Source: Pelomyxa schiedti
Lineage: Eukaryota > Protista > Evosea
Assembly (NCBI GenBank): GCA_020536535.1
Contig: JAHLWZ010000004.1
Location: 186,001 to 250,000 of the forward strand
Reading direction: 5' to 3'
Length of the DNA stretch: 64,000 bases
Shown: one piece after another, positions 4,163-49,600 of the stretch
Layout: every line of letters starts with the position of its first letter
Numbering within the stretch: the stretch's first letter is position 1
Position numbers and translations under genes: made by a program
The notes under the pieces: generated by a model
The model's input: the letters and a program-made list of their open reading frames with translations, nothing else
Told to the model about the DNA's origin: nothing
Database searches by the model: none

Positions 4163-7100
4163 ATGAAGCACAACACCAACCGAGGCCCACAGCAGCCAAC
4201 CACAACATCGGCCGTGGTCGCCAGGAAACCTCCAGTCCCTACTACGTCCACGCCCAGGTCGACACCCACAAGCGGCAGAACCGGCACCGCGGCCTCCACC
4301 ACAACAACAGGGGCCACCCGACCCTTGAGGCGCCCCAGCCCAGGGGGCCCGCCTCCGCCGCCCTCGTCGTCCTCGCATTCGAGCGGGGGGCGCTGGGGCG
4401 GCGGCGGCGGCAGCGGCGGGCCCCAGCACCGGCCCACGCCCGCATCTGCCTCCAATGCGTCGAGGCCCCCGTTCCACTTTGTGCAGCAGCCGCAGCAGCA
4501 ACACCCCCAGTCCCCCAGTTCGACGTCTCAGACGAAGACGGCTCCAAACCAGCAGTCGCAGTCTACGCAGCAGCATCAGCAGCAGGAGCAGCAGCAGCCA
4601 CAACAGCAACAGCAACTACAGCAGCGGGTGGGGCAACGAGTGAAGCTGGAGAGGGTGATAGGGTGCTGCGTCGGGGGAAACGCGTCGCTATCTGTCAACT
4701 CGGTTGTGACGGGGGGTGGTTGTGGAACCGCCACGATGGGAACCATGGGCACGGTGTCGGCTCTGAATTCGTCGACTACCACAACCACCAATATTTGCGG
4801 AGCAACTGCGAACGCAATTCCGAGTGCTGACGGACCAACTGCAATTGCTGCTAGTGCTACTGGCTCCACTGTTGGCGGAACTACCTCCTCGTCTGCTGCT
4901 ACAATTGCCTCTGACTTAAATAGTACATCTGGTTTTTCTGCGCTTCAGCCCGGTGTGACTCATTTGGTGGCTTATCCTGCTGGGCGTGTGGTGGTGCTGT
5001 ACTGCTGGCGTAGGAATAAACAGCTGGATTTTTTGATTTCGCCGGAAAACACCCCAAGTCCTTCACCTGGCACCAATGTGACTACCCCTACCCTTCAGGC
5101 TCAGAATAGCGCTGTATCATGTGTAGCATTTTCCCCTGATGGACGCTGGATTTCCGTTGGAGAGGGTGGATGTCAGTCAAGGATTGTTGTGTGGCAACTT
5201 CCACAAGACTACAGTGTAGCTGGAAGGTAGGCCAGGTTGGCTCTCTGCTTATGGGTTTGGGATATATGTGGACTGCGCTATAATAGCCCATATTCTAACG
5301 TTTGCTTATATTTGGGTTTCCTTTTTTTACAGTTCAGCTTCAGTAGTGTCAACTCTGACTGGGCATAAGTTCGGTGTACTGAATGTGTCATTCTCACCAA
5401 GTGGAGAAGTAGTTTATCTGATATGCTTTTTAAATCAGTAACGTACTTTTTACCACTAAACATAGCACATTGTTTCTGTTGGTGATGAGAATGATGGCTT
5501 CATATTTGTTTGGGAATGGAGAACTTCTGCCATAATAGCTTATGCAAAAATTGCCACCAAGGCAAGTGAATTAAAAGAAAAGCAATAATCTTACACCGAA
5601 ACCGCTAGATTTTATCACTCGACTTTTCAGAAGATGGTGCCTACTTTATTACTGCTGGCTACAAACACCTTTCATTTTGGGCAATGGATTTCAATTCCTC
5701 GACGCACGAACCACTGAGCACAACAGGACAACTCTCAGAATCAATTCCTCCCACTTTCCCAGGACTCACTGATACTAGCAAAGCCCCGTGGTTACTTGAG
5801 GGGAAAAGTGTGTCACTTGGGAATCACAAGGACTCAACTTTTACCTGCATTGCTTGTGGGAAGGGTACTGCACACAACATGGTGTATGGTGTGACACAAC
5901 GCGGACTGTTGCACAGTTTTAATTTGTCAACACGTCAGATGGAGAAGTGGGTGGACTTGCGTGGTGCTATTTATGCTGTATGTGCCAGTGAGAGATTTGT
6001 TGTCTGTGCCTGCGCAGATGGTAATGTTCGACTCTTTAATCCTGTCACTTTGCAATACGTTGGAACTCTGCCTAAGCCACATCAACTTGGTGTTAATGTT
6101 TATGGTCAATCACAGCAGCTATCTCAATCATCCAAGCCCGATGGCGTTGCCAAGTATGCTGATGCAGTTGCCTGCAGATTTTCAAGTGATGGCGGGAAGC
6201 TGGTGTGTGCTTATAGCGATCATAGCCTTTACATATGGTGCATTGATGACATCAGTAAAGTGTATAAACAACGGTCTTTCCTAGCTCACAGTTCTTGCAT
6301 TTGGTATTGTCCTTTCTCCTCTTCAATTTTCCTCAATTCCAAAAAAAAAAGGGACATCACTGTTGTGGGGCCATGCCCATCCGATCTTGCCAATTGTAAA
6401 CTGGATCCTTTTCCATCTGGAACTTTTATCACGTGCTCAAGTGATGGCACGTTGCGCACATGGAACATTGATACTGATGGGAATGTTCCAAGAAGTACTC
6501 ACTGCAAGGAGATGTTGCACATGCTCTATTTATCTGACACTTCCGAAAGCATCAAATCAATGAAAGCAATTGAAACTGATCCCTCCTCAGCAATACTCTG
6601 TGACTCTACCACTGGAAGTTTGAGTTCTGTTGGGACATGTTCGGACCTAGGGGCGTTCTCAAAAACGATACCGACTGGTGGTTTGCGGTGCTTGAGGAGG
6701 AGACCTGATGGCGCACATATTGCTGTTGGTGATAGGCAGGGCAATTTAACTGTAGTTGATACTCTTACACTTGCTGTCGTGGCTTTCCAACCTGCCCACG
6801 CTGCTGAAATCCTCTCCATGGATTACTCACACCCAGTAGACCCCGAGGCATCCTTTCTCCTTGCTACAGCTTCCAGGTGAATTTTATGGATAACTAACGG
6901 GTTTGTAACTGGTCCACAGAGATAGACTTATCCATATTTTCGACGCTGGTAAACTCAATCAACCAGTAGCAACGTACTCTCTGCTTATGACTCTTGTACA
7001 TCGACCCCTTTCTCTTTCCCTCATTCATTATGTTTCCAATAAGAATGACCATTCGTCATCCATTACATCAGTTAAATTTGCGTGCCACGGAACAAAGCTA

Positions 7101-27011: not shown

Positions 27012-27218
27012 ATACCTTCTCGGCCTTTTGGCTAAGATCAAGTGTAGTATCTGTTCTTTTCAGCTTAATATCTGAAAGCTGCCCATTGGGTAGCATCGAT
27101 ATTAAACTTATTTTTCGTGGGGTCGCTGGGGGTGTCTGCTTGGTGGTGGGGCTTGCTCTGCTGCCAAGTTGGGTGCCCTCCTGATTGCCCAGGCACTGCA
27201 CTGCCGCCTAGTGTGGTC
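27012..27218 (+). ncRNA. U2: U2 spliceosomal snRNA
   Basis: ATACCTTCTCGGCCTTTTGGCTAAGATCAAGTGTAGTATCTGTTCTT (U6-pairing and branch-point GTAGTA regions), stem IIa TCAGCTTAATATCTGA, stem IIb GCTGCCC-ATT-GGGTAGC, Sm site ATTTTTCG at 27110-27117, loop IV ACTGCACTGCC. 3' end approximate. Confidence 0.97.
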
Positions 27219-27270
27219 AGCCCCACTTTCCAAAAACAAAAAGAAGAGAAATGTAAGGATTGGGTGATAT

Positions 27271-42188: not shown

Positions 42189-42865
42189 TTTTTAATGGAT
42201 TCGTTTTCTTTGCAATTACTGTGTGTGATGGGAATTTCGTTCATAACGTTCGTATCTGATGATCTGCAGAAGGTTTTCAGATTCAAACTCCCAGACTCAC
42301 CCAAAGCACCCACAAAAACCTCTCTGCAGAAAAACAAGGGCTTCTCGGTCCTTCTGAGACAAGCTTCCATTGTGGAAACTTGACAGACAAAGTGATTTTG
42401 GTGAAATCCCAAGCAACAGTACTGGTTGCATCCAAGTAGTAAAAGCTCACCGAGTACAGATGGAACGATCACGGCTCCCTTGGCACTGGTCCCAAGTGTG
42501 GTTGCCTCAGTTCTAACAAGTCAGTGTGCTTCTTACGTTTGTCACGTGTGCTGCGGACCAACTCAGGTGTTGCTTATGCAACATCATATATTTGAGAGAG
42601 GCAGGGGGTGGAAAGGTAGCAGAGTAGCAGTGCTCAAAGGCTTGTCACACTGTCTCCTAAACTGTAGCGCTTTTGGGCCAATGTCAATTTGAGGGGGTGT
42701 GACAGGATCTCTGTTACGAAACCTCCAAAGACGAAAGAAAAAACGCCACGGAGACCTATCTCTCAATGGAAGAATACAAATTGGACCGTCCTTCAAGGTA
42801 GGCAAAAAAAAAAAATTCTATTGTACCAACACAGATAATCGCAATGACAAAACAAACAAAATTTA

Positions 42866-44338
42866 TCAGGCTAGCGACCAGCTTTGTGTGCAGTAAGTCT
42901 CCTCTGACGGGGTGCAGTACCTCTCAGGGACTCTGTTTTTGTTGGACGCTTCACTATCCTCACACTGTGGTATAAATGACAGTATCCCAATCAGCGTTAC
43001 ACCTTTCCAGTCAATTCCTAGCCATTCTCCATGTGGCACAATTTCAACTCCTCCAGAACTGAATGTTATGTCAGGTTCATGGCAACAATTTTTTCAAGGA
43101 CTTAGAAATTACCAGGGGACTGCCTCCGATCTGGATAGAGAGTGTGTGGAATAACCACAACAAGCAAGCAGATCAACCCACGTTTGCATTTCGGTCTCAC
43201 GCTCAGTTCTTAGCTCGTCAGAATTAGCAAATACATCATCCAGCTCTCGCAGGAAAAACTGTTTGACGTGGAATTTTTCCTGTGTTGATTAAGCCAGAAT
43301 TCAAGGATGAAAAGTGAACAGTTGTACTTTGTGAGTATAATCGAGTGAGTCAATGAGTTCCCAAACCAATTGAAAGTGATTCCAACTGCTTTCGAATCTT
43401 GCAGCAATCTTATTGTCTGCATGATTCAAATGCGGTTCTGCAAGTACCACGCCACTTACTCCACCCATCGACTTCACTGTCTTCAGAGTCCGGAGTAAAT
43501 CACTTCTTTTCTCAGGTAGCAAGTGATGCATCGCCAGTGAAGCCATCACAACTACTCTGCTCCTCTGAAACAAGGTAAGACTTATTACCCACAATGAGTT
43601 ATCTCTACCTCCTGATTAGCAGAGCAAAGGATTCCTTCCCATTTCTCAGTTGTGAGAGTCTCAGCAAATCCGCATACTGAGGAATATGTCACCTGAACGC
43701 CAACTGTTCTTCCGGCCTCTACGCAACTATTCCCAGCTGACCGAAGAGAGCCTTCACATAGATCTATTCCTACTATGTGTATCGAGCTCAATGTATGGCC
43801 AAGAGGCAGCGATGCAATGTGAGAGATTATCGCCCTTTCTTGTGCTCCTGTGCCAATACCGATATCAATGAGAGTGAAATGTGTATCGCCCGGCTCAATG
43901 TAAGATGTAACAGCTTCACTTAAGAGACTAGATATAGCTTTTGCAAAAATGAGTCAGTTTGCTAGTGCATGAGTTATTACCTGTGATGTACGGCAATGAC
44001 TGGAACGCATAAGCGTACAGCTCGAGCTGATTGGCCGATTTCCGCTTTGATGAATACAAGGCCGCCTTTGCTGCCCGATTTGTGATTCTCTCCTCCAGCC
44101 TATCGTGTATGTATCTAAACGACGCGTTGAGTACAAACTCTCTAAAAGAGAGGGAGAGATACTTTGCCAACGAGTCATCAGTCAAGTCAGAGACATTCAT
44201 GCCTGACAGAGCCAAACGGGCTGCAGTGGAAGCCAGGGATGTACGCATGTCAAGCAATTCACAGACCTTGCGAAGGCTTTCCTTGTGCTCAGCAGCGAGT
44301 ATGTTCTCGTTCACAATTGGACTTGGGCACTGTGCCAT
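42866..44338 (-). CDS. GRAS-domain protein (bacterial-type, Rossmann methyltransferase fold); 5 exons
   Basis: Introns 43938..43980, 43565..43608, 43280..43327 and 43059..43112 (all GT-AG, frame-preserving) give LELYAYAFQSLPYIT..FTLIDIGIGTGAQ..IHIVGID..VMASLAMHHLL..VVLAEPHLNH..SSWNHFQLVWELIDSLD..QFFLRELDDVFANSDELRTERETEMQTWVDLLACCGY..WLGIDWKGVTLIGILSF, matching the order of GRAS VHIID, PFYRE and SAW blocks. Confidence 0.8.
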
Positions 44339-44960
44339 TTCTTCAGTTGTAGGTTTGAATTCTACCGGCTATGTGGCTTGTTCTGGAGAAACTATTAGGT
44401 GAGGAAATGAAGTTGAGAAGTGTTTGCACCTTTGGGCTTTAAGTTTTATATTATTTAATGCGGTACCGTCATGGTTTATAAAGCCGAGACCTGTCAAAGG
44501 GAAATGTTTCGGTTGCAGGTGGTTTTCCCTCCGCCGCGGGGAAAAAAACTTAAGTTTTGCACGAAAGTCGGTGATTAAGGTTCGCTTCAAAGCCGATTTC
44601 CCCCTCGCACGTTCCATAAATGTCTGTCATGCACGAATTGTGTGGAAGTTCAACGGAAATATTTCGCTCTGACATCTTTCTTGGTTCGGATAGCTCGATC
44701 TGTTAGATGACAGGCTGGGCAGAACGACCTCTTCTGCCTGATTCGGACACTTACAGTGGGCAATTCGCCCAATGGTAAGAGGGGGAGTCTCGTACCATGG
44801 GAAAGGAACTTTCCCGTCGCAAACACCTTTTTCCGAATGTGATGAAGGGCGAAACGATTTCCCTGCGTCGTCGGTTAATAGTTCCCCGGCTTGTGTGGTG
44901 TCAAGGAGAATGGATCTCAGGGAATGAAATGGGAAGAGAAGGGTAAAAAGAATTGTTATT

Positions 44961-46521: not shown

Positions 46522-46616
46522 CTTGACCACAGAAAAAGACTAGCAGCACCCAAGCCAACTTTTCCTCCCTTTTGTAGATCCGCCAAAGGAACGAAAATTA
46601 ACGAAAAAACAAATTG

Positions 46617-49600
46617 ATGCGAAGGGGTGGTAGCCAAGGCAAGAAGCACCCGCCGACGTCGTCCAGCGCCAGCAGCCAACAGCGGAGTTCGTCGTCCTCG
46701 CAGAAGCCCCCTTCCAGTGCCTCCAACATAAGCCCATCGAGCAGCGACAGCGAGGGGGGAGGCGGGGGCACGGGAGGGCGCAGCGGCACCAAGGGCCCTG
46801 CGCGCAGCAGGGGCAGGCCCAGGGCCAACCCTCCCCCCGCCTCGTCGTCCTCGGCGTCGGCCTCTACCGCACCCTCCTCCGTCTCGGCCACTACGGCGGG
46901 CGGCGGATCTGCAACGGGGGCAGGCAGGGGGCAGAGGGACAAGGGCGCGGCCGGCGGCGGCAGCGGCGGGGGGAAGGCAGCGACGCCGGGGGGGAAGAAG
47001 AAGAGCGAGAGCAGGAGCCGGACGAGGAGCCGGAGCCGCAGCAAGAGCAAGAGCCGGAGCCGCAGCAGGAGCGCCAGCGGGAGCGGGAGCGCCAGCAGGA
47101 GCAGGAGCAGGAGCGCGAGCCGGGGCAAGGGGGGGAAGAAGCGGAGCCGCAGCAGGAGCAGGAGCCGGAGCGGCAGCAAGAGCAGGAGCCGCAGCAAAAG
47201 CACCACCAGGAGCAGCACCAGCCGCAGCAAGAGCCGCAGCCGGAGCCGCAGCAAGAGCGGCAGCACAAGCAGCAGCAGCAAGAGCAAGAGCAGGAGCCGG
47301 AGCGGGAGCAGGAGCAAGAGCACCAGCCGAAGCAGGAGCAGGAGCCGAGGGAGGGGCAGGGGGAGGGGCCGGGGCAGGCCCAAGGCCGCGAGCGAGGCGG
47401 CGGGCGGCAAGAGGAAGGGCAAGGCAGACGTCCACAACTTGAGCCCCAGCAAAAGCACCAGCAAGAGCAAGAGCAAAAGCAAAAGCAAAAGTAAAAGCAG
47501 AAGCAAGAGCGGGAGCAGAAGCGATGGTGACACAAGCACTAACACATCAGGGGGAGACTCACACCGTCGAGGAAGCACCTCGGGGCCCAGGAAGCGTGCA
47601 TCTGGTGGTGATTTCAATTCCAACCACGGCCGCAATCGCTCTCACAGTCACTCACGATCCCACTCTTACACGTCAGCTTCAACGCATTCTACGCAATCAC
47701 AACACTCTTCAAATCATGCGGGCAAAGTTCCGCCTAGGAATGTTGTACCGAAGACTTCTGATTCAAGTAGACATCGCAGTCCATCACCAAAGACATCGGC
47801 CCCAAGTAGCAGTGAACGTCAAGAGAATTCAAAGACTTCACCAACCCAAAAAGCACAAAAACAACCTCCAACAAATGAGCCAACACCCAAAACCAATGCA
47901 GGAATTCCCAATACAAGTAATAGCACCCCAAGTTCTAGCACAAATTCGACCCCTTCACAGACACATAGTTCTGGAACAAATGCCACCCCTGCACAGGTAC
48001 CACCCGCACCCCAGTCGAAAACACAACAGACTCCTTCGACTACTCCTATCACCCCTTCTTCATCACTACCTACACCCAACACTGCAACTGTAACTGCAAC
48101 TGCAGCTAGTACGGCTTCCACTTCCACTCCTATTACTGCTCCTACTACAACTGCACGCCAACCTCCTCGCCAGTCAACACCAGTCTTACCAGTAGTTCAC
48201 GTTGCAACTTCAACCACAACCTCAGCTCCCCCCGCCTCCACAACAGTCTCTCCTACGGCACCATTAGTATCAACTAATTCAACAGTAAGAAATACCACTG
48301 TTACAATTGTAACCCCTAAAGCGGTGGCCAAACCTTCCGCATCTGTGGGTTCTGCCCCTGTGTCTTCCACGGTGTCTGCTCCAGCACCTTCCGCAGTTTC
48401 TGGCCCAGCTTCTTCCACAAGCAGCCCACAAACCCAAAAACCAAATGTGCCTACAACTCCAACAGGGCCAGTTGTTTCTACACAAAACCTTTCAAAAGTT
48501 ACACCTGCAACTTCTCAATCTAAACCCACTGTAACCGTAGTGCTCCCTCAAAATCCAAAGGTGACTACCTCTTCTCCCCCGCCTACCCTTCCAGTGACAA
48601 CAAATTCAACTCCAACGCCTTCCTCAACCAAGAGTACAATAACACCCACACCCCAAACCCCAACTGTGGCTACTGCTGTAACAGTACAGACGTCTTCATC
48701 ACTCTCTAGCCTTCCACCCAACCCACCCAGCGTGAATATAGTGAAACCCAGTACCGCACCCATCCCTGTACGAAAGGTTCCTCCGCCAACACCCGCAAAT
48801 GTACCTTCAGCGGCTCCAGAACCCATCAAGGAAAAGGAGTCACAGCAGCTCCCCCCTCCAGCAATCACTCCCGCTCCCGCTTCCATTCCCATTCTCAATC
48901 CTACTCCAGCTCACACTCCCAGTCCTGCTCCAACTCCAACTCCAACTCCAAATCCAAATCCAACTCCAACTCCAACTCACACTCCAACTCTCGTTCCCGC
49001 TCCCGCTCCCGCTCCCCCTCCCCCTCCCACCCCAACAGCGTTAGCCGATTCCACGCAGAAGACAACTTCAGCAATAACTACTACACCGACACCAGCTCCC
49101 ACAAGTACCATATCCCATCAACCTGAGCCTCAGGCGGCCAACAAAGCTGTCGCACCGGCTTCCGCTGACGTGGTGCTTGAGGACGCCAAAGACTTGGAGC
49201 CAAACCCCTTACAACCTCTTTCCTCTTCCTCCTTGGCCGATTCGGCGTATGCAACATTGAGTGAAATCAGTTTCTAACATGGTACCTTAAGGCTCATCAG
49301 GCAGAAAGAAGCGGAAATAGAGACGCTCAGAACAACTATTGCAGCTATGCAGGAGTTGAGTGATGATCTACAAAACCCTGTTGTCCTCACAGTAAGTTAC
49401 CAACCTCACATCTACGGCTTGCGTGATTGCCTCACAGGCTTTTTTTTTTCTTCCCCTCTCTTCTGCCCAGCCCTTCCTTCTTCTTCTTGCTTCTTCATTG
49501 TTTTGCTTTATTTTGTTTAATTTTATTTTTTTTTACAAGTGCTCTTTGTTGATGTTTAGATGATATGGCTTCTCGATACACTGATAACTGAAATGATATA

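What the first reader, a model, noticed from the sequence alone, without database searches (positions are those of the whole stretch)
42866..44338. Intron-containing GRAS-domain gene of bacterial type in a non-plant eukaryote
GRAS proteins (DELLA, SCR, SHR) are regarded as streptophyte plant regulators derived by horizontal transfer from bacterial Rossmann-fold methyltransferase-like GRAS proteins. This ~410-aa protein shows all blocks in order: LPY helix, LIDIGIGTGAQ (VHIID), IVGID, AMHHLL, LAEPHLNH, WNHFQLVWELIDSL, RELDDVF..RTERE..TW..L...G and WKGVTLIGI (SAW). It keeps an intact DxGxGxG (43846-43869) and the acidic beta-2 residue, as bacterial members do, so it may be an active SAM-dependent small-molecule methylase. 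Four clean spliceosomal introns and eukaryotic neighbours (DENN, NBS1) argue against contamination. This would be an independent bacteria-to-protist GRAS transfer and a tractable model of the ancestral GRAS activity. I cannot confirm it is unreported.
Basis: partly seen in the sequence, partly recalled or inferred. Interest (0 to 1): 0.9.

Follow-up and report, generated by a model that had tools for sequence, protein, structure and literature searches.

The report
Bacterial-type GRAS gene in an amoeba
The anaerobic amoeba Pelomyxa schiedti carries a real, intron-containing nuclear gene (with a second copy elsewhere in its genome) for a bacterial-style GRAS protein, a family otherwise described only from plants and prokaryotes; it was most likely acquired from a prokaryote long ago and probably still binds S-adenosylmethionine (SAM).

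Summary
Window 42866-44338 (minus strand) encodes a 411-aa protein identical to GenBank KAH3768014.1, named "GAI protein [Pelomyxa schiedti]". It has five GT-AG introns, not four. It is a GRAS-domain protein: Pfam PF03514 scores 79 bits against a cutoff of 27. The 12 best Foldseek matches of a confident AlphaFold2 model are all plant GRAS structures; ordinary SAM methyltransferases follow about seven orders of magnitude in E-value behind.

It is of the prokaryotic type. It scores 233 bits against a prokaryote-only GRAS profile, and at best 137 bits against a single bacterial protein versus 27 bits against a plant structure. It is a stand-alone domain with an intact DIGIGTGAQ motif.

It is a resident nuclear gene. 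It lies on a 467-kb contig between eukaryotic genes. A 1.9-kb paralogue in a different context shares all five introns, and dN/dS between the copies is 0.087.

No donor can be named: identity to any prokaryote is 25-30%, on a very long branch. I could not obtain plant sequences for a tree, so independence from the plant acquisition is strongly suggested but not shown.

Methyltransferase activity is inferred, and three residues nearly invariant in the family have changed. The searched literature does not mention the gene. It is a new member of a known kind, of moderate interest.

The parts
42866..44338 (-). GRAS-domain gene (copy A), from ATG to TGA. The product is 411 aa and equals GenBank KAH3768014.1, 'GAI protein [Pelomyxa schiedti]'.
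44163..44338 (-). Exon 1 (residues 1-59, N-terminal cap helices).
   Evidence: AlphaFold2 helices 11-30 and 34-45 at pLDDT 89-97; the prokaryote-only HMM aligns from residue 16
44115..44162 (-). Intron 1, 48 nt, GT..AG, in frame.
   Evidence: It is absent from the GenBank product. It is 49 nt in the paralogue, so it must be spliced there, and it diverges like the other introns.
43981..44114 (-). Exon 2.
43938..43980 (-). Intron 2, 43 nt, GTAATA..AG.
43609..43937 (-). Exon 3: Rossmann strands beta-1 to beta-3, with SAM motif I.
   Evidence: Pfam GRAS profile positions 114-188; secondary structure
43846..43866 (-). D128-I-G-I-G-T-G134, the glycine-rich SAM-binding loop (motif I). Q136 follows at 43840-43842.
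   Evidence: The columns are at least 92% conserved, mostly invariant, across 141 prokaryotic GRAS proteins and are kept here.
43762..43764 (-). D162, the acidic residue at the C-terminal end of beta-2 (Glu in 99% of prokaryotic members).
43565..43608 (-). Intron 3, 44 nt, GTAGAG..CAG.
43328..43564 (-). Exon 4: beta-4, the invariant H226-H227 (43523-43528), beta-5 with E256-P257, then H261, R269 and H276.
   Evidence: Pfam GRAS profile positions 201-272
43280..43327 (-). Intron 4, 48 nt, GTACAA..CAG.
43113..43279 (-). Exon 5: K298, F300, R303-E304, D307, R316, E318 and W326 are kept. The family's ERHE motif reads ERET here (E320 and T321, 43193-43198).
   Evidence: Pfam GRAS profile positions 287-333
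43059..43112 (-). Intron 5, 54 nt, GTAATT..CAG.
42866..43058 (-). Exon 6: the C-terminal beta-strands (the 'SAW' region, WKGVTLIGILSF), a roughly 30-aa tail of low model confidence, and the stop codon.
42810..44671 (.). Block duplicated elsewhere in the genome. It is 92% identical over about 1.9 kb to contig JAHLWZ010000595.1 and includes about 330 bp of 5' flank and all five introns.

Best explanation
This is a genuine nuclear gene of the anaerobic amoeba Pelomyxa schiedti. It encodes a stand-alone GRAS-domain protein of the prokaryotic type: a helical cap on a class I Rossmann methyltransferase core. The most likely history has four steps. A GRAS gene was taken up from a bacterium or archaeon long ago. 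It diverged strongly. It gained five short spliceosomal introns typical of the host. It was then duplicated as a 1.9-kb block that carried its own promoter region. Both copies are kept under strong purifying selection, so the protein does something for the amoeba. The most likely biochemistry is SAM binding and methylation, or at least binding, of an unknown small molecule in the cleft between cap and core. Shown here: GRAS membership, prokaryotic-type affinity, nuclear residence, the duplication and the selection. Inferred: the direction and age of the transfer. Inferred from motifs only: SAM binding and catalysis.
For: Identity and host: the product is identical to KAH3768014.1 of P. schiedti, and the window is identical to a stretch of the 466,869-bp contig JAHLWZ010000004.1.

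GRAS membership: Pfam PF03514 scores 79 bits against a cutoff of 27. P0021 alone hits rice SCL7 (E 2e-5) and SCARECROW (E 1.8e-4) in the PDB and no other methyltransferase at E below 1. The AlphaFold2 model has pLDDT 87 and pTM 0.87. Its 12 best Foldseek PDB matches are all plant GRAS domains (E 7e-19 to 2e-15, TM 0.63-0.79); SAM-dependent small-molecule methyltransferases follow at E about 1e-8.

Prokaryotic type: 233 bits against a prokaryote-only GRAS HMM over residues 16-389. The best single bacterial match is 137 bits (Hyalangium), with a median of 102 bits over 249 proteins, against 27 bits to the best plant structure. Bacterial proteins themselves reach 50-75 bits against plant structures. 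The exhaustive search with exon 3 (residues 104-212) found only the paralogue and prokaryotic-type GRAS proteins, some fused to TerB, CBS or aminotransferase domains. The protein keeps D128, G130, G132, G134, Q136, D162, H226, H227, E256, P257, H261, R269, H276, K298, R303, E304, D307, R316, E318 and W326.

Nuclear residence: five GT-AG introns of 43-54 nt, eukaryotic neighbours and a U2 snRNA gene in the window.

Duplication and selection: the paralogue on a second contig has different neighbours, the same five intron positions, 95% identical exons and 89% identical introns. dS is 0.185, dN is 0.016 and dN/dS is 0.087.
Against: No donor is identifiable. Identity to any prokaryotic GRAS protein is only 25-30%. 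In the tree the two Pelomyxa copies sit alone on a branch of about 3 changes per site, placed only on the non-Bacteroidota side of one well-supported split. The root is unknown, so the direction of transfer rests on taxonomic distribution, not on topology.

No plant sequences could be brought into a tree, so a sister relation to the plant clade is not formally excluded.

Three positions conserved in at least 96% of prokaryotic members are changed: N220 to M just after beta-4, and ERHE to ERET at residues 320-321. P163, P245 and G302 are also changed. Catalysis may therefore be altered or lost.

I know of no biochemically characterised bacterial GRAS protein and found no solved structure of one. 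Three bacterial gene neighbourhoods gave no functional clue. I have no direct transcript evidence for the gene.
Confidence: 0.75

Rival explanations
1. The protein has lost catalysis and acts, as plant GRAS proteins do, as a non-enzymatic binding or scaffold protein, for example a small-molecule sensor or a regulator through protein-protein contacts.
For: N220, H320 and E321, conserved in at least 96% of 141 prokaryotic GRAS proteins, are replaced, along with several other conserved positions; 28 of 72 highly conserved columns differ. The lineage branch is very long, as expected after a change of function. All characterised GRAS proteins (the plant ones) are non-enzymatic regulators, as the molecule names reflect.
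Against: SAM motif I is perfect, and the acidic beta-2 residue, E196, the HH pair and EP..H are all kept. There is no added DNA-binding or disordered regulatory domain; the protein is a bare GRAS domain. Retention of the glycine loop under dN/dS 0.087 suggests that the cofactor site still matters.
Confidence: 0.3
2. The gene descends from the same acquisition as plant GRAS genes, or came from a plant or streptophyte alga, rather than from a separate prokaryote-to-amoeba transfer.
For: The unrooted tree contains only prokaryotes and Pelomyxa. Pelomyxa is not nested inside any prokaryotic phylum-level clade, so an origin outside the sampled prokaryotes is formally open. Plant sequences could not be obtained.
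Against: Similarity to plant GRAS proteins is much weaker (27 bits) than to bacterial ones (up to 137 bits) and weaker than bacterial-to-plant similarity (50-75 bits). The protein has the DxGxGxGxQ, HH and EP signatures of prokaryotic members, whereas the plant SCL3 shown reads 'viDLdasepaQW', a single H at that point ('LH') and 'TEQDSDHN'. It has no plant-type N-terminal region. Amoebozoa and streptophytes are unrelated lineages, and the literature places the plant acquisition in the ancestor of Zygnematophyceae and land plants (PMC12448838).
Confidence: 0.07
3. The gene is a bacterial or endosymbiont contaminant, or a misassembly, in a single-cell genome of an amoeba full of prokaryotic symbionts.
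For: P. schiedti harbours Syntrophus, Vesiculincola and Methanoregula endosymbionts, and its assemblies contained several prokaryotic bins (PMC10579272). The nearest relatives of the gene are prokaryotic.
Against: Five spliceosomal GT-AG introns interrupt the frame. The gene sits in the middle of a 467-kb contig between FHA/BRCT and DENN/LIM genes. A second copy lies between ankyrin and RasGEF genes with the same introns. No prokaryote is more than about 30% identical. GC (47%) and GC3 (45%) lie within the range of host exons in the window.
Confidence: 0.01
4. It is only a generic class I SAM methyltransferase that resembles GRAS by chance of shared fold.
For: There are weak sub-threshold hits to generic methyltransferase models: Methyltransf_25 at E 0.074, and MraW and PrmC for the exon-3 piece alone.
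Against: Pfam GRAS is about 52 bits above its gathering score, and no other family passes. The Foldseek list shows a gap of about seven orders of magnitude in E-value, and roughly a factor of two in TM-score, between GRAS structures and the best ordinary methyltransferase. The alignment with prokaryotic GRAS proteins runs end to end, including the N-terminal cap helices and the helices inserted after beta-5.
Confidence: 0.01

Closest known systems
Prokaryotic GRAS family proteins. NCBI names them 'GRAS family protein' or 'GAI protein' (for example Paenibacillus mucilaginosus, Myxococcaceae, Hyalangium versicolor, Bacteroidota, Candidatus Methanoperedens). Zhang, Iyer and Aravind (2012) predicted them to be Rossmann-fold small-molecule methyltransferases; I cite that paper from memory and from the reference list seen, because it could not be read.
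   Same: A stand-alone domain of about 360-400 aa that aligns end to end (233 bits against their profile). It shares DxGxGxGxQ, an acidic beta-2 residue, HH after beta-4, EP..H after beta-5, and the K, F, RE, D, R, E and W positions in the C-terminal helices.
   Different: Only 25-30% identity to any of them, on a very long branch. N220 is replaced by M, ERHE reads ERET, and P163, P245 and G302 are lost. There is a roughly 30-aa extra C-terminal tail. The gene is eukaryotic, with five introns and a paralogue.
Plant GRAS transcriptional regulators (SCL3, SCL7, DELLA proteins RGA and GAI, SCARECROW, SHORT-ROOT, NSP1 and NSP2).
   Same: The same Pfam family and the same fold (TM 0.63-0.79 to solved structures), with collinear motif order from the leucine-rich helices through the VHIID-equivalent strand to the PFYRE-equivalent helices.
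   Different: 13-18% structure-based identity and 27 bits pairwise at best. The plant SCL3 shown lacks the glycine-rich SAM loop. Plant proteins carry N-terminal regulatory or disordered regions and act through protein partners; the amoeba protein is a bare domain with an intact SAM loop. Plant GRAS genes are mostly intronless (PMC10699852), whereas this gene has five introns.
Class I SAM-dependent small-molecule methyltransferases (BelI, SgvM, MppJ, DtpM, EgtD and family-2 O-methyltransferases).
   Same: The Rossmann core with motif I and an acidic beta-2 residue. They form the second tier of structural matches (E about 1e-8).
   Different: TM-score normalised to the query is only 0.33-0.39. 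They lack the GRAS-specific cap arrangement, and none of their Pfam models passes threshold on this protein.

Membership tests
GRAS domain family (Pfam PF03514) | The whole protein scores above the curated gathering score of the family HMM. | tested here: met
P0021 scores 79.0 bits, E 4.2e-22, against a cutoff of 27, over residues 56-344 and profile positions 40-333 of 374. The paralogue scores 76 bits.
GRAS domain family (Pfam PF03514) | The GRAS fold: a helical cap on a Rossmann-like alpha/beta core, closer to solved GRAS domains than to other methyltransferases. | tested here: met
   AlphaFold2 model with pLDDT 87.2 and pTM 0.87. Foldseek PDB ranks 1-12 are all GRAS domains (E 7e-19 to 2e-15, TM 0.63-0.79); the first non-GRAS match has E 1e-8 and TMq 0.35.
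GRAS domain family (Pfam PF03514) | A C-terminal SAW-region strand that completes the sheet. | tested here: inconclusive
   Pfam profile positions 334-374 are not matched. However, the prokaryote-only HMM aligns through residue 389, and the model has confident strands at 352-378. There is no literal S-A-W tripeptide.
Prokaryotic-type GRAS (predicted SAM-dependent methyltransferases) | An intact SAM motif I (DxGxGxG, then Q) and an acidic residue at the end of beta-2. | tested here: met
   D128, G130, G132, G134 and Q136 are kept. D162 stands where 99% of prokaryotic members have E.
Prokaryotic-type GRAS (predicted SAM-dependent methyltransferases) | The full set of family-invariant pocket residues (N before the HH pair, HH, EP..H, R, H, K, RE, D, R-E-x-H-E, W). 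| tested here: inconclusive
   44 of the 72 columns that are at least 80% conserved are kept, including all 15 invariant ones. N220 to M, H320 to E and E321 to T are exceptions at positions that are at least 96% conserved.
Prokaryotic-type GRAS (predicted SAM-dependent methyltransferases) | Closer in sequence to prokaryotic members than to plant members. | tested here: met
   233 bits against the prokaryote-only HMM and up to 137 bits pairwise, compared with 79 bits against Pfam and 27 bits against the best plant structure. This is a similarity argument, not a rooted phylogeny.
Prokaryotic-type GRAS (predicted SAM-dependent methyltransferases) | SAM binding and methyl transfer to a substrate. 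| not testable with these tools
   This needs recombinant protein. I know of no characterised bacterial member and found no solved structure of one.
Plant GRAS transcription regulators (DELLA, SCR, SHR and others) | An N-terminal variable or regulatory region (for example DELLA/TVHYNP) ahead of the GRAS domain. | tested here: not met
   The GRAS alignment starts at residue 16 of 411, so there is no room for an N-terminal domain, and no other Pfam family is found.
Plant GRAS transcription regulators (DELLA, SCR, SHR and others) | Phylogenetic placement inside the streptophyte GRAS clade. | not tested
   No tool returned a plant GRAS sequence that could be used in a tree. Only similarity scores are available.

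The most novel reading that the evidence does not exclude
This is the first GRAS-domain gene documented in a eukaryote outside the streptophyte plants. It would be a second, independent prokaryote-to-eukaryote capture of the family that, unlike most plant members, has kept the SAM-binding site. That would give a natural comparison for how a bacterial small-molecule methyltransferase is domesticated in a eukaryotic nucleus: intron gain, duplication and loss of the ERHE motif.
Probability: 0.45. Interest if true: 0.6.

Novelty: new member of a known kind. Interest (0 to 1): 0.45.

Why it matters
Among eukaryotes, GRAS proteins are routinely described as plant-specific. They are explained by a single transfer from soil bacteria into the ancestor of Zygnematophyceae and land plants (PMC12448838, PMC9942845). 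A selected, intron-bearing, duplicated GRAS gene in an archamoeba shows that the family has entered a eukaryotic nucleus at least in one further lineage. It also shows that it can persist there as a bare domain with an intact SAM loop.

This adds a data point on lateral gene transfer into anaerobic amoebae. It also offers an outgroup-like case for asking which features of plant GRAS proteins are domestication changes. The practical value is limited. The function of the prokaryotic family is unknown, cultured bacteria are better systems for finding the ancestral activity, and the gene is already in GenBank under a GRAS-type name.

Tried and rejected
1. PDB sequence searches with single exons gave nothing useful. 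The full-length protein and the profile were needed.

2. All three word-indexed protein searches returned only Pelomyxa and prokaryotic proteins: P0001, profile A1 and the bacterial P0004 GRAS region. No plant GRAS sequence became available, so no tree including plants could be built.

4. Codon usage (RSCU correlation 0.36 with host exons) and GC content are compatible with the host but too weak to discriminate.

5. Gene neighbourhoods of three bacterial GRAS genes (Myxococcaceae, Paenibacillus, Flammeovirgaceae) showed no conserved partner genes and gave no hint of the substrate.

6. Zhang, Iyer and Aravind 2012 (PMC3463117) is not held and could not be read.

7. Literature searches for GRAS in amoebae or protists found only plant gene-family papers. 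The Pelomyxa and Mastigamoeba genome papers do not mention GRAS.

8. Model coordinates are not exposed to scripts. I therefore could not map N220, H320 and E321 onto the pocket.
Full report
**What is there.** The minus strand of window 42866-44338 carries an interrupted open reading frame.

An exhaustive HMMER search of 1.84 billion representative proteins with one exon (residues 104-212) found a 96%-identical protein, P0001. Its cluster holds two GenBank entries, both named "GAI protein [Pelomyxa schiedti]": KAH3760657.1 (365 aa) and KAH3768014.1 (411 aa, P0021).

P0021 equals my spliced product exactly, apart from 16 residues that correspond to a further in-frame 48-nt GT..AG intron at 44115-44162. 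That segment is 49 nt long in the paralogue, so it cannot be coding there, and it diverges like the other introns. The gene therefore has six exons and five introns. The window is an exact stretch of the 466,869-bp contig JAHLWZ010000004.1 of assembly GCA_020536535.1.

**The host is a eukaryote.** The window contains a U2 snRNA gene at 27012-27226 (139.7 bits). It also has a WDR62/MABP1-type WD40 gene, an ankyrin gene and a uDENN exon. Pelomyxa schiedti is an anaerobic free-living archamoeba. Its genome paper reports 7.4 introns per gene, 98.4% of them GT-AG (PMC8887013).

**It is a GRAS protein.** Three consecutive exons match Pfam PF03514 in collinear order. The full protein scores 79 bits (E 4e-22) against a gathering score of 27, and no other family passes.

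Against all PDB sequences, the protein alone finds only rice SCL7 (E 2e-5) and SCARECROW (E 1.8e-4) at E below 1. A profile of the protein plus ten prokaryotic relatives finds every solved plant GRAS domain (E 1e-29 to 2e-13) and nothing else at E up to 0.01.

An AlphaFold2 model built on a 143-sequence alignment is confident (pLDDT 87.2, pTM 0.87). It shows N-terminal cap helices, a seven-stranded Rossmann-type core and two long helices inserted after beta-5. Foldseek against the PDB puts twelve plant GRAS chains first (E 7e-19 to 2e-15, TM 0.63-0.79). SAM-dependent small-molecule methyltransferases such as BelI, SgvM, MppJ, DtpM and EgtD follow at E about 1e-8 and query-normalised TM 0.33-0.39.

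**It is of the prokaryotic type.**
- Apart from the paralogue, the best hits of the exhaustive search are GRAS proteins 33-37% identical over the exon used as query, several fused to TerB, CBS or aminotransferase domains.
- A scan of one genome per GTDB species found 209 relatives. The best 80 come from Myxococcota, Gemmatimonadota, Bacteroidota, Paenibacillaceae, Actinomycetota, Cyanobacteria, Methanoperedens and Bathyarchaeia. All are 25-30% identical to the amoeba protein.
- Against an HMM built only from 141 prokaryotic sequences, the amoeba protein scores 233 bits over residues 16-389.
- Its best pairwise score is 137 bits (Hyalangium versicolor) and the median is 102 bits.
- Its best score against a plant structure is 27 bits, whereas bacterial GRAS proteins reach 50-75 bits against the same structures.
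- It keeps the signatures of prokaryotic members: DIGIGTGAQ, an acidic residue ending beta-2 (D162, where bacteria have E), HH after beta-4 and EP..H after beta-5. The plant SCL3 shown reads 'viDLdasepaQW', a single H at that point ('LH') and 'TEQDSDHN'.
- The protein is a bare domain without a plant-style N-terminal region.
- NCBI also applies the name "GAI protein" to bacterial members such as those of Paenibacillus mucilaginosus. The GenBank name therefore probably came from bacterial best hits.

**It is a resident, selected gene.** The second copy lies on contig JAHLWZ010000595.1 between ankyrin, RasGEF and glycosyltransferase genes, a different context from copy A. The two loci are alike only over about 1.9 kb (92% identity): roughly 330 bp of 5' flank, the gene, and about 55 bp of 3' flank.

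All five introns sit at the same positions in both copies. Exons are 95.0% identical and introns 88.9%. Between the coding sequences dS is 0.185, dN is 0.016 and dN/dS is 0.087, and only 6 of the 13 amino-acid differences fall in the 289-residue GRAS core.

The introns therefore predate the duplication, and both copies have been under strong purifying selection since. The frame of copy B is intact from the same ATG, so its 365-aa GenBank model is probably an N-terminally truncated annotation. GC (47%) and GC3 (45%) lie within the range of host exons. Contamination or misassembly is excluded.

**Origin.** I built a maximum-likelihood tree (LG+C20+F+G4 PMSF, careful search) of the two amoeba proteins and 80 prokaryotic GRAS domains. 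It puts the amoeba pair alone on a branch of about 3 changes per site. That branch attaches on the non-Bacteroidota side of a split supported at 100/96, and every path to a prokaryote exceeds 4 changes per site.

No donor phylum can be named. The known endosymbionts of P. schiedti (Syntrophus, Vesiculincola, Methanoregula; PMC10579272) are not implicated. The tree is unrooted and lacks plants, because none of my three protein-database searches returned a plant sequence.

That the gene came from a prokaryote, independently of the plant acquisition, therefore rests on three things:
- the similarity triangle above (amoeba to bacteria, bacteria to plants, amoeba to plants);
- the shared prokaryotic-type signatures and stand-alone architecture;
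- the taxonomic distribution, with the family broad in prokaryotes and, in the literature I could search, confined among eukaryotes to streptophytes (PMC12448838).

I rate this inference at about 0.8.

**Likely mechanism.** On the model, beta-1 (residues 123-129) leads into the G130-x-G132-x-G134 loop. Beta-2 (155-162) ends in D162. Beta-3 (185-192) is followed by the conserved E196. Beta-4 (216-222) is followed by the invariant H226-H227, and beta-5 (251-257) carries E256-P257. From established knowledge of class I methyltransferases, these are the positions that contact the methionine, ribose and adenine parts of SAM and that carry substrate or catalytic residues. SAM binding is therefore likely.

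Against unchanged catalysis, three positions conserved in at least 96% of prokaryotic members are replaced (N220 to M, H320 to E, E321 to T), as are P163, P245 and G302.

I know of no characterised bacterial GRAS protein, and three bacterial gene neighbourhoods gave no clue to the substrate. I put roughly even odds on a still-active small-molecule methyltransferase versus a SAM- or ligand-binding protein without turnover.

**Novelty and verdict.** The gene is already in GenBank under a GRAS-type name. It is not mentioned in the P. schiedti genome paper, in its held supplements, or in any paper my searches found. It is a new member of a known family in an unexpected host lineage.

It is interesting for GRAS evolution and for lateral gene transfer into anaerobic protists. 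It is not categorically new, and cultured bacteria with GRAS genes are a better route to the ancestral activity.

Noticed in passing
window 27012-27226 (+): A complete U2 spliceosomal snRNA gene (Rfam RF00004, 139.7 bits, model positions 1-192 of 192). It was the only Rfam match at gathering threshold in the window, and ARAGORN found no tRNA genes.
   Followed up: no
window 46614-49277 (+), hexamer array 47009-47345: A long open frame with no Pfam match encodes an extremely Arg/Ser-rich (RS-dipeptide) and Gly/Ser-rich protein. It explains the strong AT skew (0.41) and high GC of 46-48 kb. The array has about 56 copies of GAGCAG, and a second hexamer array (TCCAAC) lies at 48899-48990.
   Followed up: partly
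L081:10001-11335 (contig JAHLWZ010000595.1): The paralogue's GenBank model (KAH3760657.1, 365 aa) starts at Met47 of the copy-A numbering. Yet the frame is open from the same ATG as copy A, and the first 46 residues differ at only two positions. The model is probably an N-terminally truncated annotation.
   Followed up: yes
P0004, P0011, P0007, P0019, P0013, P0160 (metagenome proteins): Prokaryotic GRAS domains occur fused to C-terminal TerB domains, CBS pairs, an N-terminal class I/II aminotransferase and an ABC ATPase domain. The aminotransferase fusion is notable because the nearest non-GRAS structural neighbours include the alpha-keto-acid C-methyltransferases SgvM and MppJ. This may be a lead on substrate class; I did not test it.
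   Followed up: no
L003, L009 (GTDB loci): Archaeal genomes (Candidatus Methanoperedens, Bathyarchaeia) carry GRAS genes that group with bacterial ones: Methanoperedens with a Myxococcaceae sequence, and Bathyarchaeia with Paenibacillus at 100% SH-aLRT support. This suggests transfer among prokaryotes.
   Followed up: no
P0002, P0003, P0005, P0006, P0010, P0017: Very long proteins (1,400-3,950 aa) matched residues 23-49 or 72-98 of the exon used as query in 4 to 29 separate short stretches each. They look like repeat proteins unrelated to GRAS. I did not examine them.
   Followed up: no
window 4163-6877 (+): Two adjacent open frames match the first and second WD40 propellers of MABP1/WDR62 (E 3e-41 and 6e-25). 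They are probably exons of one large WDR62-like gene.
   Followed up: no
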